DNA of 64,000 nucleotides from Dendrobates tinctorius (taxonomy: Eukaryota), in the NCBI RefSeq assembly GCF_039654945.1, contig NW_027361968.1:1984001-2048000 (forward strand), given 5' to 3'. The notes below the pieces were generated by a model. The model saw only the letters and a list, made by a program, of their open reading frames with translations. It made no database searches and was not told the DNA's origin. The position numbers were made by a program, and so were the translations under genes. Positions 54,829-63,418 of the stretch are shown one piece after another; position 1 is the stretch's first letter; every line of letters starts with the position of its first letter.

Positions 54829-57800
54829 ATGAAGAAGCTTCTCCTGCTCCTCACACTCCTCACACAGCGTGGTATGGATCTGACCACCACCCTCATCCCT
54901 GACATGCCCCCTCCAAGTCCTTCCATCAATATCTGCATCCTCATCATCCTCATCCTGGGTTTTGTTATCATTGTCATCCTCTTCCTCACTCTTATCACTA
55001 TCCTCACCCGGGTATCTCTACATCATTTCTAACCTCTTGTTTTTTTCCCTTATTCTAAGGATTTCTAGGAATTTCAGCATCAGCGGGTGAGAAATGTCTA
55101 AATCTGAAGTGAATTGCGGTCATAAGGATTTCCTGAAATCCCTCAGCATTAAGGTGTCAATGTCCTTCCCCACGGGCAATGTGATCCTCCGCAGAGATCC
55201 TCTACGGAAACCAGCAGATCCTCCAGAACCTCCCAGAGTCAACCACGCTGTCCATCTGAGTATTTTCGGTTGACAGATGATCCCTCAAGTGATTATCATA
55301 GAGTTGGGGATGGGTTTAGGGTTGAATCCTAATATCAAGTTGTGATGGATCGTCAGTCTTCACCTAAGGGTTGAGTTTGACTCTACCTTTAGGCATCTGC
55401 CATACATCTTTCCCTTTTCCCTTTAGGTGGTCGAAATCTGTCACGTCTCCTCAGGATTGTGGGAGGAACTAATTCTGCAGTAGACGAATGGCCCTGGCAG
55501 GTCAGTCTGCATTTTAATGGCAATGCCAACTGTGGGGGCTCTCTCATCAGCGATACCTGGGTGCTGACAGCCGCTCACTGCTTTAATACGTAAGTTCCCG
55601 GAAATATTCTCTTACAATATGCACCATATAACTGTAAGTCAGGCAGATCTACATTGTGTCCCGGATGGTTGGCTATATCTTACACACCACTGGTGATACA
55701 TTTTGGATGAGTGCAGACAGGGGTCTGGGAGCACTAAGGCTAAACTATACATAGGCATAACCTAATAAACCCCGGAAGGTGATCATATATGAGGCTAAGA
55801 TCGCACAATGAGTATTTGGTGCGTTTTTTTCTGCTTTTTTTCAAGCGCAAAAATGCAGCATTTTACAGTTCAAGTAAATTTTATGGGATTTATTAGAACT
55901 CTCATTCCCACTTTTTTCTTTACGCTGCAGAATCTGACTGGCAAAGCTTAAAATATGCAACATGTCAATTTTTGCGCAGTAAGTATGCATTTTACTTGTG
56001 GATTTTGCTCAGCGTTGAATGATATGAAGAAAATCTGCACCCTCCCCATCCCCCATATATGCGCCGTTCTTACATTTGTGTAGTGGAAGCACAATAAAAA
56101 TTCATGTAAATTTGTGAATTTATCAATAATGTTTTCTTCAAAGTGAACAACAGTTTCCAAGACAAAGCTATTTTATTTAATACATGACATACCAAAAAGA
56201 GATAAAAACACACAGGAAAAAATGTAATAAAAACTCAATGAAAAAAATGCAAGTACCTCATGCAGAAATGCTGCAAAAATAGCAGCATCATAAATGCACC
56301 AAATAGTCATTGTGGAAACTTAGTCAACAGGTGTTATTTGGTTGTTGGTTGGGGACCGCCATGGGTCTTGTTCAACCCCAAGTTATCAAATGTTACATAA
56401 TCTATAATGTACAGACTTCTGGATCCAGTTTTAATTATATATACATATGGGGGAACATAGAAAAATGCATACAGAAGTGAGCCATTCATATATTAAGGTA
56501 TCGCATAGAATAACTCTGTTATATAGGGGATGACAGCAGAGGTACTGTTTCAATTTTTGATTTGGGCCTTCTATATGTTTATGTGAACAACTGACACAAA
56601 ATTTAGGACATGCTACATATTTTAACAAGGATAACCAAAACATCCCCAATTTGCATGAAATGCATGAAATCAGGGAGCTTACCCTATATCAGTGTGGAGC
56701 AGAGTCTGGTTGGCTGAGTACACTCAGCCAACCAGACTCTGCTCCACACTGATATGGGGTAAGCTCCCTGATACATCTGTCTGTAGAAGTAGATATCCCT
56801 GGATATGTTGCTAGCTTCACTAAAATGCTGACAATTTACATTCACATTAAGTAGCTATTCTTCCTGGTTGAGACTTGATAGTTACTTTGATTCTGTGAAA
56901 GACCTAATTTGTCCCTTATTTTGTTGTATTCTCTTGCCTATCTTCTGAACATATACTCCATGCTTTACAGGATGCCGGATCCGCTAGCGTACACCATCTA
57001 TCTTGGGTTGTATCAATTATCTGATCTGCAGAACCCCAAAGCAATGTCCAGGACAGTGAAACAAATAATTATTCACCCCAATTATCCAAGTGAGCAATCC
57101 AGTGGAGACATTGCTTTGGTGAAACTGGAGAGCCCAGTAGCTTTCACTTCTTCCATCCATCCAGTGTATCTGCCATCTCGGGCTGTGCAGCTGCCAGAGG
57201 GAACCCTGTGCTGGGTGACTGGCTGGGGATATGTGAGAGAAGAAGGTAGGCAAAGGTCTCAGAAATGGAATGATGATGCTGGATATAGATTCATGTCAGC
57301 TATGATCTTCTCCACAGTTCCTCTCACCGATCCTAAAACTCTGCAGAAGGTGGATGTAGCTCTGATAGACAGCAAAAACTGTGAGACCATGTACATGTCT
57401 GATGACGCCTCCGAGTCCAACTCAAAACTTATCCAGGAGGACATGTTCTGTGCCGGCTACCAGGAGGGGAAGAAGGATACATGTCAGGTATGAGACACTG
57501 GAAGTTGTAGTGGATGATGTCTGTCGGTAGACTTGGTTCCCAAAACATTGGTGAATAGTAGCAAAAGTTTGCAAAAAGTTTTTATAATAATCTATTATAT
57601 ACATTGTATCAATCTGTGAGAACTGTCTTCATATCAACTCCCAGCAGGGGGCGGTAGAAGGCCGTGTACCAGTTATTTAGTGCTCTAGTTCACACGACCT
57701 CCATGCAGGGGGTGGTAGAAGGCCGTGTACCAGTTATTTAGTGTTCTAGTTCATACAACCTCCCAGCAGGGGGCGGTAGAAGGCTGTGTACCAGTTATTT

Positions 57801-60800: not shown

Positions 60801-63418
60801 CCAGCAGGGGGTGGTAGAAGGCCGTGTACCAGTTATTTAGTGCTATAGTTCATACAACCTCCCAGCAGGGGGCGGTAGAAGGCTGTGTACCAGTTTAGTG
60901 CTATAGTTCATACGACCTCCCAGCAGGGGGCAGTAGATGGTCGTGTACCAGTTATTTAGTGCTGTAGTTCATACAACCTCCCAGCAGGGGGCGGTAGAAG
61001 GCCGTGTACCAGTTATTTAGTGCTGTAGTTCACACAACCTCCCAGCAGAGGGTGGTAGAAGGCCGTGTACCAGTTATTTAGTGCTGTAGTTCATACAACC
61101 TCCCAGCAGGGGGCAGTAGAAGGCCATGTACCAGTTATTTAGTGCTGTAGCTCATACGACCTACCAGCAGGGGGCGGTAGAAAGCCATGTACCAGTTATT
61201 TAGTGCTGTAGTTCATACGACCTACCAGCAGGGGGCGGTAGAAGGCCATGTACCAGTTATTTAGTGTTGTAGTTCACACGACCTCCCAGCAGGGGGCAGT
61301 AGAAGGCCATGTACCAGTCATTTAGTGCTCTAGTTCACACAACCTGCCAGCAGGAGGCGGTAGGCCATGTACCAGTCATTTAGTGCGCTAGTTAACACGA
61401 CCTCCCAGCAGAGGGCGGTAGAAGGCCGAGTACCAGTTATTTAGTGCTGTAGTTCATACAACCTCCCAGCAGGGGGCGGTAGAAGGCCGTGTACCAGTTA
61501 TTTAGTGATCTAGTTCACACAACCTCCCAGCAGGGGGCGGCAGAAGGCCGTGTACCAGTTATTTAGTGCTGTAGTTCATACAACCTCCCAGCAGGGGGCG
61601 GTAGAAGGCCCTGTACCAGTTATTTAGTGCTGTAGTTCATACAACCTCCCTGCAGGGGGCGGTAGAAGGCCGTGTACCAGTTATTTAGTGTTGTAGTTCA
61701 CACAACCTCCCAGCAGGGGGCGGTAGAAGGCCGTGTACCAGTTATTTAGTGCTGTAGTTCATACAACCTCCCAGCAGGGGGCGGTAGAAGGCCGTGTACC
61801 AGTTATTTAGTGTTGTAGTTCACACAACCTCCCAGCATGGGGCGGTAGAAGGCCGTGTACCAGTTATTTAGTGATCTAGTTCACACGACCTCCCAGCAGG
61901 GGGCAATAGAAGGCCGTGTTCCAGTTTAGTGCTCTAGTTCACACGACCTCCCAGCAGGGGGCGGTAGAAGGCCATGTACCAGTTATTTAGTGTTGTAGTT
62001 CACACAACCTCCCAGCAGGGGGCGGTAGAAGGCCGTGTACCAGTTATTTAGTGATCTAGTTCACACAACCTCCCAGCAGGGGGCGGTAGAAGGCCATGTA
62101 CCAGTTATTTAGTGTTGTAGTTCACACAACCTCCCAGCAGGGGGCGGTAGAAGGCCGTGTACCAGTTATTTAGTGATCTAGTTCACACAACCTCCCAGCA
62201 GGGGGCGTTAGAAGGCCGTGTACCAGTTATTTAGTGATCTAGTTCACACGACCTCCCAGCAGGGGGCGGTAGAAGGCCGTGTACCAGTTATTTTGTGCTG
62301 TAATTCATCCAACCTCCCAGCAGGGGGCAGTAGAAGGCAGTGTACCAGTTATTTCGTGCTGTAGTTCATACAACCTCCAAGCAGGGGGCAGTAGAAGGCC
62401 GTGTTCCAGTTTAGTGCTCTAGTTCACACGATCTCCCAGCAGGGGGCGGTAGAAGGCCGTGTACCAGTTATTTCGTGCTGTAGTTCATACAACCTCCCAG
62501 CAGGGGGCGGTAGAAGGCCGTATACCAATTATTTTGTGCTGTAATTCATATAACCTCCCAGCAGGGGGCAGTAGAAGGCCGTGTACCAGTTATTTCGTGC
62601 TGTAGTTCATACAACCTCCAAGCAGGGGGCAGTAGAAGGCCGTGTTCCAGTTTAGTGCTCTAGTTCACACGATCTCCCAACAGGGGGCAGTAGAAGGCCG
62701 TGTAATAGTTATTTAGTGTAGTAGTTCACACAACCTCCCAGCAGGGGGCAGTAGAAGGCCGTGTACCAGTTATTTAGTGCTGTAGTTCATACGACCTCCC
62801 AGCAGGGGGCAGTAGAAGGCCGTGTACCAGTTATTTAGTGCTGTAGTTCATACGACCTCCCAGCAGGGGGCAGTAGAAGGCCGTGTTCCCGCTTCTCAGT
62901 GCTCTAGTTGTGACTGGCAGCCGATGGCAGTGCCACGTTTCCAGCTTCTCTGCGCCACAGAAGACTTTTCTCGTGAGACGTCTCGGGATGATAATTACCA
63001 AGCGTCTAACATTTCATAAACTCTTCTGCAGAAACGTTTGTCATTCTTTCGTTTCGCCGCAGCTCGTCGGCAGCGCTCATCGTGCCCCTTTCCTCTAATA
63101 GTTGGGCGGCGGCGGTTGGTCAGGTCCTGGCGCTCTACTCTGATCACTGACTTTCCGGTCTCATTGCAGGGTGACTCCGGGGGACCGCTCGTTTGTAATG
63201 TGAATGGTGTTTGGCTACAACTCGGCATTACCAGCTGGGGTTTGGGATGTGCCTCGGCCAATCGTCCAGGCGTTTACACCCGCGTGCAGCACTACCAGTC
63301 CTGGCTGCAGGGGCTCGTGCCTTCTCTGCAGTTCAGCAATGGAGGGAAGATTTTGCATCCAAACAGAAGACTAAAGACAACACAAGCCCCCCGTCACCTC
63401 ACAGCCCGGCGCCTGTAG
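54829..63418 (+). CDS. Second trypsin-like serine protease (paralog of 46073-50150); catalytic triad intact, no in-frame hydrophobic tail
   Basis: Exons 54829-54871, 55060-55086 (27 nt), 55427-55589, 56971-57245, 57318-57487, 63170-63418. Exon sizes mirror gene 1 (43/27/163/275/170). R-IVGG, TAAHC, GDIALV, DTCQGDSGGP, PGVYTRV. AATAAA at 63685-63690. Confidence 0.92.
55792..56325. mobile_element. Non-autonomous DNA transposon (MITE) with ~30-bp imperfect TIRs
   Basis: GGCTAAGATCGCACAATGAGTATTTGGTGC at the left; GCACCAAATAGTCATTGTGGAAACTTAGTC at the right is its approximate reverse complement. Confidence 0.6.
56669..56772. repeat. Near-perfect palindrome, 51-bp arms with a 2-nt spacer
   Basis: Arms 56669-56719 and 56722-56772 with a single mismatch. 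Confidence 0.95.
57636..62888 (+). repeat. 61-bp satellite, ~86 copies, nearly every unit carrying a CTCF consensus motif; fills the last intron of protease gene 2
   Basis: Unit CCTCCCAGCAGGGGGC(G/A)GTAGAAGGCCGTGTACCAGTTATTTAGTGCTGTAGTTCA(T/C)AC(A/G)A; 1394-bp internal block duplication. Confidence 0.95.

What the first reader, a model, noticed from the sequence alone, without database searches (positions are those of the whole stretch)
57636..62888. Tandem array of ~86 co-oriented extended CTCF motifs inside a protease intron
Seen: the typical 61-bp unit reads CTGTAGTTCA-N9-CCAGCAGGGGGC(G/A)GTA. Established: the vertebrate CTCF core is CCASYAGRKGGCRS, and the ZF9-11 upstream module is roughly CTGCAGTKCC, 8-9 bp before the CC. 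The core matches at every position in typical units, and the upstream module matches 8/10 at a canonical spacing. Inference: a real extended CTCF site next to the exon 5 donor was amplified into a 5.2-kb satellite. This could act as a directional super-anchor or cohesin barrier whose strength varies with copy number, comparable to the CTCF-bound DXZ4 and Firre arrays in mammals but denser. A 61-bp period leaves room for one CTCF per unit and could disfavour nucleosomes. I do not know of a description of this satellite.
Basis: partly seen in the sequence, partly recalled or inferred. Interest (0 to 1): 0.85.

Follow-up and report, generated by a model that had tools for sequence, protein, structure and literature searches.

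The report
Amplified CTCF-type site in frog intron
A docking site of the type bound by the genome-folding protein CTCF is single-copy in one protease-gene intron of other frogs but has been copied head-to-tail 5, 87 or about 1,450 times in poison frogs, giving a natural but still untested series of ever-larger one-directional site arrays.

Summary
Window 57638-62886 is a 61-bp tandem array of 87 units in the last intron of a serine-protease-27-like gene of Dendrobates tinctorius. 65 units match the CTCF core consensus exactly and 85 match at 13/14 or better, all on the + strand.

New here:
- The same intron holds one homologous site in Eleutherodactylus coqui, Pristimantis and two Bufo species. 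It lies 115-149 bp after the exon and keeps the same orientation.
- The site is better conserved than the neighbouring exons, so it is probably a real functional element.
- In poison frogs it was amplified: 5-6 units in two Ranitomeya species (cores partly decayed), 87 in D. tinctorius, and about 1,445 units (86.7 kb) in Phyllobates terribilis.
- The locus is subtelomeric and rich in minisatellites in every chromosome-scale relative checked.

The tandem junction creates it, only 35 units show it at 8/10, and Phyllobates lacks it.

CTCF binding and boundary function remain untested.

The scan had already noted three other CTCF-like arrays elsewhere in this genome (TERF2, HGD, a 17-kb intronic array).

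Verdict: a new variant of CTCF-site tandem arrays, most likely grown by neutral unequal exchange. Moderately interesting.

The parts
57638..62886 (+). 61-bp minisatellite of 87 head-to-tail units, each carrying one CTCF-type core (CCAGCAGGGGGCRG) on the + strand
   Evidence: TRF; unit listing; core and matrix counts
57641..57661 (+). First core plus 7 bases (CCAGCAGGGGGCGGTAGAAGG). This copy still sits in the ancestral left-flank context, 153 bp from the intron donor.
   Evidence: homologous to the single-copy site of E. coqui, Pristimantis and Bufo
57488..57640 (+). Unique left part of the intron, from the donor GT to the array. It is colinear with the relatives: 95% identical in Ranitomeya variabilis and alignable in E. 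coqui and Bufo.
58978..61764 (+). Recent internal segmental duplication. About 1.39 kb (23 units, 58978-60370) is repeated at an offset of +1394 with at least 98% identity.
62887..62925 (+). Degenerate partial unit at the right junction. It is homologous to the sequence that follows the single site in E. coqui and Bufo (TTCTCAGTG..C.AGT).
62926..63169 (+). Unique right part of the intron. It contains a second conserved block (TTTTCTCGTGAGACGTCTCGGGATGATAA), remnants of an older 29-bp minisatellite (about 63060-63110), and is CpG-rich.
57318..57487 (+). Penultimate coding exon of protease gene B (...[19 protein letters not shown])
63170..63417 (+). Last coding exon of gene B (GDSGGPLVC... to the stop codon), tryptase/prostasin-like

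Best explanation
One conserved CTCF-type site near the start of the last intron of a serine-protease-27-like gene was duplicated in tandem in an ancestor of dendrobatine poison frogs. The duplicated segment was about 61 bp and began roughly 9 bases upstream of the core.

The resulting minisatellite has since been resized by unequal exchange or replication slippage in a subtelomeric region rich in minisatellites. It now has 5-6 units in Ranitomeya, 87 in D. tinctorius and about 1,445 in Phyllobates terribilis.

Shown:
- the ancestral single copy and its conservation;
- the shared junctions in poison frogs;
- the copy numbers;
- the recent internal duplication;
- the sequence competence of most units.

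Inferred:
- The growth itself is most likely a neutral by-product, not selected. Copy number is unconstrained, and small arrays let most cores decay while keeping at least one good site.
- The units have no CpG at the methylation-sensitive motif position 2. I put the chance that CTCF occupies at least part of the array in some tissue at about 40-50%.
- If occupied, all CTCF molecules would point the same way and would block cohesin arriving from the downstream (3') side.
For: **Array and motif statistics:**

**Species and locus:** L004 from the D. tinctorius assembly GCA_039654945.1 gives identical array statistics.

**Orthologous arrays with the same left and right junctions:**
- R. variabilis has 6 units.
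- R. imitator has 5 units.
- P. terribilis has 1,445 uninterrupted units over 86.7 kb at 96.5% pairwise identity, and its last exon is intact.
- Independent short-read contigs of four coded organisms show the same junctions. Unit-to-flank depth ratios are about 4x, 6x, 45x and 4,800x.

**Single-copy homologue in outgroups:**
- In the 8-species alignment, the longest run of invariant intron columns falls on AGCAGGGG of the core.
- The 34-bp block is 31/34 identical between E. coqui and D. tinctorius, against 77% for exon 5.

**Ranitomeya cores decay:**
- R. variabilis has 0/6 exact cores, with 3 hits of 12 bits or more (best 17.0).
- R. imitator has 2 exact cores, with 4 hits of 12 bits or more (best 21.6).

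**Unequal exchange:** a 1.39-kb internal duplication at 98% identity or better.

**Subtelomeric setting:**
- The locus is 0.7-16 Mb from a chromosome end in relatives.
- 40% of the window is minisatellite.
- Frog extended subtelomeres are known sites of recombination-driven minisatellite expansion. CTCF-motif density correlates with recombination rate there, r = 0.54 (PMC10794172).

**Methylation:** methylation at position 2 dominates inhibition of binding, and position 12 matters little (PMC10325916; PMC6600276). The unit has CA at position 2.

**Frog CTCF:** X. tropicalis uses the same motif logic, with convergent motifs at domain borders (PMC8270788).
Against: - There are no binding, methylation, accessibility or contact data for any of these frogs, so occupancy is a guess.
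- The conserved block extends 7 bases beyond the 14-bp core (TAGAAGG), and a second conserved block lies about 60 bp downstream. The element could therefore serve another factor or a splicing function.
- CpG positions are the most variable sites in the unit. This fits germline methylation and therefore a mostly closed state.
- Hyla sarda, Dendropsophus and Mixophyes genes of the same family lack the site. This reflects either loss or non-orthology.
- Short-read depth ratios from contigs are rough.
- I matched the coded organisms to species by junction letters only.
Confidence: 0.62

Rival explanations
1. One reading: the array is a selected, functional directional super-anchor or cohesin barrier whose strength scales with copy number.
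For: - Units are dense, co-oriented and high-scoring.
- The ancestral site is conserved.
- One published insulator screen needed 2-4 tandem CTCF sites for insulator activity (cited in PMC12885311).
- DXZ4 and Firre show that CTCF-site arrays can anchor long-range contacts (titles and abstracts).
Against: - Copy number ranges from 5 to about 1,445 among close relatives with the host gene intact, so there is no sign of constraint on dosage.
- Cores decay in the small Ranitomeya arrays.
- The upstream module linked to strong insulation is not ancestral and not conserved.
- The core is only slightly less variable than the rest of the unit (0.024 against 0.039).
Confidence: 0.15
2. CTCF occupancy of the ancestral site itself made the spot fragile, for example through fork stalling, topoisomerase or cohesin-linked breaks, or meiotic breaks at open chromatin in frogs that lack PRDM9. 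On this view CTCF sites are preferred seeds of minisatellite birth. This does not exclude the best explanation.
For: - Earlier scan notes list three more CTCF-like arrays in this genome. Two are said to derive from sites that are single-copy in other frogs (not checked here).
- Chance expectation for a CTCF-grade unit is about 3.5e-5 per family.
- Amphibians lack PRDM9, and CTCF-motif density correlates with recombination in X. tropicalis (PMC10794172).
Against: - The same intron already carried an unrelated 29-31-bp minisatellite about 190 bp away in Bufo and Pristimantis. The region was therefore repeat-prone regardless of the site.
- 11 other arrays in the window have no CTCF-like unit.
- The first-stage reader looks for CTCF motifs, so the count of such arrays is biased by how they were found.
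Confidence: 0.2
3. The conserved element is not primarily a CTCF site. It could be another factor's site or an intronic splicing or Pol II-pausing element tied to the upstream exon, with the CTCF resemblance incidental or secondary.
For: - The distance from the exon donor is nearly fixed (115-153 bp) and the site is always on the sense strand in 8 species.
- Conservation extends beyond the core (TAGAAGG) and includes a second block.
- The unit also contains GGGGCGG, a GC-box-like string.
Against: - The invariant columns coincide with the most informative core positions.
- Scores of 21-23.5 bits in Terrarana are at the top of the matrix range.
- The variation that is tolerated falls at the degenerate motif positions 8 and 13.
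Confidence: 0.12
4. The array is an assembly artefact or is grossly mis-sized.
For: The near-identical 1.39-kb internal duplication could be a collapse or expansion error. The window and L004 come from the same assembly, so they are not independent.
Against: - Four independent assemblies of three other species carry the repeat at the same junctions.
- Short-read contigs of four organisms show tandem units and both junctions.
- Runs from the source sample hold the array's words.
Confidence: 0.03

Closest known systems
DXZ4 (also Firre and ICCE): CTCF-binding tandem arrays on the mammalian X chromosome
   Same: Head-to-tail repeats in which every unit carries a CTCF motif in one orientation. Copy number is variable. 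Position is conserved while the sequence turns over (PMC3218863, PMC3491370, PMC6125249, PMC5899087; listed).
   Different: Those units are kilobases long; here the unit is 60-61 bp, so site density is about 50 times higher. For those arrays CTCF binding and superloop anchoring are demonstrated and are specific to one chromatin state. Here nothing is measured. This array is intronic and autosomal or unassigned, and its single-copy ancestor is identified.
Minisatellites of frog extended subtelomeres (Bredeson et al. 2024, PMC10794172)
   Same: Short-unit arrays that expand and contract in the recombination-rich terminal tens of megabases of frog chromosomes. Different expansions occur in different lineages. 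The locus here is 0.7-16 Mb from a chromosome end in relatives.
   Different: The published examples derive from pieces of transposable elements. This one derives from a unique, conserved intronic element that scores as a strong CTCF site.
Human 1q23.3 tRNA/CTCF variable-number tandem repeat (PMC4041453)
   Same: A copy-number-variable tandem repeat proposed as a boundary element because each unit binds CTCF.
   Different: That unit is 7.3 kb and carries tRNA genes, with 9-43 copies and measured binding.
Human subtelomeric 61-29-37-bp repeat promoters with an adjacent CTCF site (PMC6600276; Deng et al. 2012, cited there)
   Same: A CTCF site lies a few hundred bases from subtelomeric minisatellites, and that site also has CA rather than CpG at motif position 2. 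The outgroup frogs show the same neighbour arrangement, with a single site about 190 bp from a 29-31-bp array.
   Different: In humans the CTCF site is not itself the repeated unit. The equal unit lengths (61 and 29 bp) are a coincidence, and I have no evidence of sequence relatedness.
SINE B2-borne CTCF sites in rodents (PMC10982698)
   Same: Lineage-specific multiplication of CTCF sites.
   Different: That spread is by retrotransposition to dispersed loci. This is local tandem amplification at one locus. Unit depth in Ranitomeya-like and related runs is only 4-6 times the flank, which argues against dispersal there.

Membership tests
Vertebrate CTCF binding site | Match to the core motif recognised by zinc fingers 3-7 | tested here: met
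   65/87 units match CCASYAGRKGGCRS exactly and 85/87 at 13/14 or better. The median matrix score is about 20-21 of 27.3 bits.
Vertebrate CTCF binding site | Evolutionary conservation of the site at an orthologous position | tested here: met
   A single homologous site lies on the same strand, 115-149 bp from the donor, in E. coqui, Pristimantis, B. gargarizans and (weakened) B. bufo. The invariant columns fall on the core.
Vertebrate CTCF binding site | Upstream module for zinc fingers 9-11 (present in about 13-15% of sites, PMC12885311) | tested here: not met
   The ancestral-context sites match at 4-5/10, which is chance level. The in-array 10-mer reaches 8/10 in only 35 units, is 6/10 in P. 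terribilis, and is created by the tandem junction. This module is optional for membership.
Vertebrate CTCF binding site | No methylatable CpG at the inhibitory motif position 2 | tested here: met
   The core begins CCAG. The only CpG is at position 12-13, in the GGCGG variant. Literature on methylation sensitivity.
Vertebrate CTCF binding site | Occupancy by CTCF in vitro or in vivo | not testable with these tools
   No ChIP, CUT&RUN, footprint or EMSA data for these species were reachable.
CTCF-bound tandem arrays (DXZ4/Firre type) | Tandem units, each with a co-oriented CTCF motif | tested here: met
   All hits are on the + strand: 87 units here and 1,445 in P. terribilis.
CTCF-bound tandem arrays (DXZ4/Firre type) | Macrosatellite unit size (kilobases) | tested here: not met
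   The unit is 60-61 bp.
CTCF-bound tandem arrays (DXZ4/Firre type) | Anchors long-range contacts or forms a domain boundary | not testable with these tools
   No Hi-C maps were reachable.
Frog extended-subtelomere minisatellites | Location in the terminal tens of megabases of a chromosome | tested here: met
   Distances of the orthologous locus from a chromosome end: R. variabilis 7.2 Mb, P. terribilis 16 Mb, B. bufo 6.6 Mb, B. gargarizans 0.7 Mb. The D. tinctorius scaffold itself is unplaced.
Frog extended-subtelomere minisatellites | Lineage-specific expansion with variable copy number | tested here: met
   1 copy in outgroups, then 5-6, 87 and about 1,445 copies in poison frogs. Neighbouring arrays also differ 2-5 fold between D. 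tinctorius and R. variabilis.
Frog extended-subtelomere minisatellites | Derivation from a transposable-element fragment (as in the published examples) | tested here: not met
   The unit derives from unique intronic sequence that is colinear across three frog families. There are no other copies in the window and no Rfam match.

The most novel reading that the evidence does not exclude
Conserved single-copy CTCF sites may be preferred seeds of minisatellite birth in poison frogs, which as amphibians lack PRDM9 (stated in PMC10794172; not checked in poison frogs). This locus shows the full series of 1, 5-6, 87 and about 1,445 copies. Earlier scan notes report at least two more loci in the same genome where a site that is single-copy in other frogs became an array. 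On this reading the resulting co-oriented arrays, up to 87 kb long, are occupied and act as copy-number-tunable, one-directional barriers to loop extrusion or as cohesin sinks. Boundary strength would then evolve by repeat length.
Probability: 0.18. Interest if true: 0.85.

Novelty: new variant of a known kind. Interest (0 to 1): 0.58.

Why it matters
- If the units bind CTCF, this locus is a natural dosage series. The same site in the same intron and orientation is present 1, 5, 87 and about 1,450 times in related frogs. How barrier strength, cohesin retention, transcription through the array and DNA methylation scale with the number of tandem sites could then be read from existing species, without engineered constructs.
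- It documents, with the ancestral state in hand, how a conserved regulatory site can become a satellite.
- Together with the other arrays noted in this genome, it raises the testable idea that CTCF sites seed minisatellites.
- Practically, an 87-kb intron made of one motif is invisible to standard short-read ChIP and motif censuses.

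Tried and rejected
- **Other copies in the window:** blastn-short of a unit dimer against the rest of the window found none. The homologous intron of paralog A (47918-49736) has no related sequence and no matrix hit.
- **Rfam:** the whole window at gathering thresholds gave nothing, so there is no link to the hammerhead or retrozyme-like elements noted elsewhere in this genome.
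- **Failed or replaced calls:** a Pfam scan of exon pieces failed because one reference was out of frame, and I did not repeat it. I used the PDB sequence search instead. A brute-force simulation timed out and was replaced by an exact score distribution. One paper search and one paper look-up were rejected for term format and re-run. A fuzzy regular expression mis-registered the cores and was replaced.
- **Earlier findings by sequence:** nothing returned.
- **Whole-array read laying:** I laid only the left flank plus two units. Joints across the array therefore come from assemblies, not reads.
- **Methylation argument, weakened:** I first argued that CpG decay in the core shows germline methylation and hence no binding. 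Three things undercut this. The ancestral state at position 13 is ambiguous (G in Pristimantis; A in E. coqui, Bufo and Phyllobates). The excess of CA over TG is shared by the non-core CpGs. Methylation at position 12 has little effect on binding.
- **Site clustering at array edges:** single CTCF-like hits appeared to cluster at array edges in the window (5 of 8 within 400 bp). I treat this as post hoc and weak, and one of the hits is an inverted partial unit of the 35-bp array.
- **Outgroups without the site:** Anomaloglossus P0072 was not on record. The Hyla sarda, Dendropsophus and Mixophyes genes lack the site, and their orthology is uncertain.

Full report
**1. The observation.**

Tandem Repeats Finder reports one array at window 57638-62886, with period 61, 86.5 copies and 90% matches. 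Anchoring on the core gives 87 units, with 77 spacings of 61 bp and 9 of 58 bp.

- The consensus CCASYAGRKGGCRS is matched exactly by 65 units and at 13/14 or better by 85.
- All matches are on the + strand. The rest of the window has a single match (44142) and the - strand has none.
With it, 85/87 units score at least 12 bits. The median is about 20-21 of a maximum 27.3.
- An exact score distribution gives about 3.5e-5 as the chance that a random 61-bp unit reaches 20 bits on either strand.
- Twelve minisatellite arrays fill about 40% of the window. The other eleven all score below 8 bits.

So the core observation is real and is not chance.

The 'extended' part is weaker. The 10-mer nine bases upstream of the core matches CTGCAGTKCC at 8/10 in 35 units and at 7/10 in 40. 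Only 26 units have both an exact core and an 8/10 module.

**2. Gene context and species.**

The array lies between an exon ending ...[14 protein letters not shown] and an exon beginning GDSGGPLVC.... The first ends at 57487 with the donor GT at 57488. The second runs from 63170 to the stop at 63417.

- The last exon is most similar to tryptases and prostasin among solved structures.
- A diverged paralog (gene A) lies upstream, with its GDSGGP exon at 49737.
- A protein search named the family 'serine protease 27-like'.
- A locus from the D. tinctorius assembly GCA_039654945.1 (L004) reproduces the array statistics exactly. The window is therefore Dendrobates tinctorius, as an earlier scan note had said.

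**3. The array in relatives.**

Sequencing-run look-ups showed that array words and flank words occur in several other coded organisms.

- All four organisms have a contig running from the exon and flank into the first unit.
- Two show tandem units within one contig.
- Two show the right junction.
- Unit-to-flank word depth is about 4x, 6x, 45x and 4,800x.

Assemblies then gave the sequences.

| Species (locus) | Units in the orthologous intron | Notes |
|---|---|---|
| Ranitomeya variabilis (L001) | 6 | 759-bp intron; left flank 95% identical; same right junction |
| R. imitator (L003) | 5 | |
| D. tinctorius (window, L004) | 87 | |
| Phyllobates terribilis (L002) | 1,445 | 89-kb intron; uninterrupted 59-60-bp units over 86.7 kb |

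In P. terribilis:
- pairwise unit identity is 96.5%;
- 920 of the 1,371 units found with the stricter anchor have an exact core;
- about 1,458 + strand hits in the intron score at least 12 bits;
- the last exon is intact.

The loose-end letters of two coded organisms equal the Ranitomeya junction and the Phyllobates unit. I infer the identity of these organisms from that match alone.

The two large arrays have nearly the same first 37 bases of the unit, with one difference. They differ at six or more of the last 23 bases, which include the supposed upstream module: CTGTAGTATA in Phyllobates, 6/10.

**4. The ancestral state.**

They do.

| Species (locus) | Matrix score, + strand | Core distance from donor |
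|---|---|---|
| Eleutherodactylus coqui (L005) | 21.3 bits, the only hit of 12 bits or more | 149 bp |
| Pristimantis euphronides (L008) | 23.5 bits | 115 bp |
| Bufo gargarizans (L010) | 16.3 bits | 115 bp |
| Bufo bufo (L006) | 10.2 bits; one G of the run lost | 115 bp |

- In Pristimantis, CCAGCAGGGGGCGGTAGAAGG is 21/21 identical to the main D. tinctorius variant.
- Alignments of the intron starts are colinear across all eight species. The longest run of invariant columns apart from the donor is AGCAGGGG of the core.
- The 34-bp block around the core is 31/34 identical between E. coqui and D. tinctorius. Exon 5 is only 77% identical.
- A second conserved block (TTTTCT.GTGAGA.GTCT.GGGAT.ATAA) lies about 60 bp downstream, and in D. 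tinctorius it sits on the far side of the array.
- Gene order (paralog A, gene B, then a reverse-strand protease gene) is shared, which supports orthology.
- The related genes fetched from Hyla sarda, Dendropsophus and Mixophyes lack the site. I cannot tell loss from non-orthology.

An intronic element conserved better than the flanking coding exons across three hyloid families is most simply a functional element. Its sequence is a top-scoring CTCF site.

**5. How the unit was made, and the upstream module.**

The collapsed alignments show how the unit arose.

- The repeated segment starts about 9 bases upstream of the core.
- It ends in sequence that follows the single site in outgroups (TTCTCAGTG..C.AGT...).
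- A degenerate partial unit survives at the right junction (62887-62925).
- CTGTAGTTCA therefore comes from downstream sequence that tandem duplication placed in front of the next core.

In every ancestral-context site, the best match to CTGCAGTKCC at spacings of 7-10 is 4-5/10, which is chance level. These sites are the single copies of the outgroups and the first units of D. tinctorius and P. terribilis. The literature puts this module about 8-9 bases before the CC and in 13-15% of sites (PMC12885311; PMC10484683). The geometry inside the array is therefore permissive. But the module was not part of the amplified site, it is the most variable non-CpG part of the unit (0.070 against 0.024 for the core), and it is not kept in Phyllobates.

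**6. Dynamics and setting.**

- A 1.39-kb block of 23 units (58978-60370) is repeated at +1394 with at least 98% identity. This is direct evidence of recent unequal exchange, unless it is an assembly error.
- The small Ranitomeya arrays are old and not homogenised (83% matches). Most of their cores have decayed, but each species keeps at least one site of 17 bits or more.
- Neighbouring arrays between the two paralogs are also orthologous between D. tinctorius and R. variabilis, and differ 2-5 fold in copy number.
- The same intron carries an older, unrelated 29-31-bp minisatellite starting about 190 bp downstream of the site. It has 232 copies in B. bufo, 119 in B. gargarizans and 41 in Pristimantis. 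Remnants survive in dendrobatids, and P. terribilis has a 26-bp array there.
- The locus lies 0.7-16 Mb from a chromosome end in every chromosome-scale relative.

This matches the 'extended subtelomere' of frogs. There, recombination is concentrated, minisatellites expand repeatedly, amphibians lack PRDM9, and CTCF-motif density correlates with recombination at r = 0.54 (PMC10794172).

**7. Mechanism.**

Shown: a conserved single CTCF-type site, its tandem amplification in dendrobatine frogs, and large, recent, lineage-specific changes in copy number.

Inferred: growth is by unequal exchange or slippage and is most likely neutral. Three things point that way.
- Copy number is unconstrained over more than two orders of magnitude.
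- The host gene stays intact.
- Surplus cores decay where homogenisation is weak.

Whether CTCF sits on the arrays is open.
- For: the sequence is of very high quality. There is no CpG at the inhibitory position 2, and the only CpG is at position 12, where methylation has little effect (PMC10325916; PMC6600276). Frog CTCF uses the vertebrate motif logic (PMC8270788).
- Against, or neutral: the CpG positions are the most polymorphic sites of the unit. This fits germline methylation, though the direction of change at core position 13 is ambiguous among outgroups.

I put occupancy of at least part of the array in some tissue at about 40-50%, and a selected boundary function at about 15%. If occupied, the N-terminal side of CTCF (zinc finger 3) would face downstream (for orientation). 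The array would then stall cohesin arriving from beyond the 3' end of the gene.

**8. Comparison and novelty.**

The closest systems are the CTCF-binding X-linked arrays DXZ4, Firre and ICCE, and the 1q23.3 tRNA repeat. They share one co-oriented site per unit and variable copy number. They differ in unit size (kilobases against 61 bp) and in having measured binding.

The array also fits the class of frog subtelomeric minisatellites, except that it derives from a conserved unique element and not from a transposable-element fragment.

Four full-text searches on CTCF, satellites and frog genomes returned no description of this satellite or of CTCF-site minisatellites in amphibians. The D. tinctorius genome paper does not contain the terms satellite, tandem repeat or CTCF.

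The scan itself has already followed up three other CTCF-like arrays on other DNA of this genome: TERF2, HGD, and a 17-kb intronic array. I did not check those.

I class this as a new variant of a known kind.

**9. Limits.**

- The weight matrix is from memory.
- Contig depths are rough.
- Organism codes are matched to species by junction letters only.
- The window and L004 are the same assembly.
- Phylogenetic statements rest on my own knowledge, not on a tool result. These are that Phyllobates lies outside Ranitomeya plus Dendrobates, and that Terrarana, Bufonidae and Dendrobatidae span much of Hyloidea.
- No binding, methylation or contact data were available.

Noticed in passing
window 2576-54512 (arrays listed): Twelve minisatellite arrays fill about 40% of the window. 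Their units are 26, 31, 31, 35, 35, 42, 44, 51, 61, 74, 86 and 86 bp. The 35-bp and the 86-bp units each occur as two separate arrays. Only the 61-bp array is CTCF-like.
   Followed up: partly
L006:12758-19485, L010:8244-11656, L008:8764-9976, L002:102462-104474; window about 63060-63110: The same intron holds an older 29-31-bp minisatellite starting about 190 bp downstream of the single CTCF-type site. It has 232 copies in Bufo bufo, 119 in B. gargarizans and 41 in Pristimantis. P. terribilis has a 26-bp array of 77 copies there, and only remnants remain in D. tinctorius and Ranitomeya. I judged the relatedness of these units by eye only.
   Followed up: partly
window 50651-51149, 52722-53549, 54074-54512 versus L001:5348-6446, 8737-8899, 9500-9786: The 31-bp and 44-bp arrays between the two protease paralogs are at orthologous places in Ranitomeya variabilis. 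Their copy numbers differ 2-5 fold, so minisatellite loci are long-lived in these frogs.
   Followed up: partly
window 63437-63455 (+) and L001:13806; window 44139-44157 (+): A second single CTCF-type hit (16.4 bits) lies 20 bp after the stop codon of gene B and is kept in R. variabilis (15.5 bits). Another strong single hit (19.1 bits) lies upstream of paralog A.
   Followed up: no
window 62889-63400: CpG observed/expected is 0.84 across the right part of the intron and the last exon, against 0.40-0.44 in the array and the rest of the window. This is a CpG-island-like patch directly downstream of the array.
   Followed up: no
window 6691-6709 (-) next to the 35-bp array starting at 6725: An inverted partial copy of the 35-bp unit (TAGGGGGCAGTA) sits 16 bp before the array and scores 16.5 bits on the CTCF matrix. 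It forms an inverted repeat at the array edge.
   Followed up: no
window 46560-49990, 55456-63417; L001, L004, L008: There is a conserved cluster of serine-protease-27-like genes: paralog A, gene B, then a reverse-strand family member. Gene order is shared from Pristimantis to Dendrobates.
   Followed up: partly
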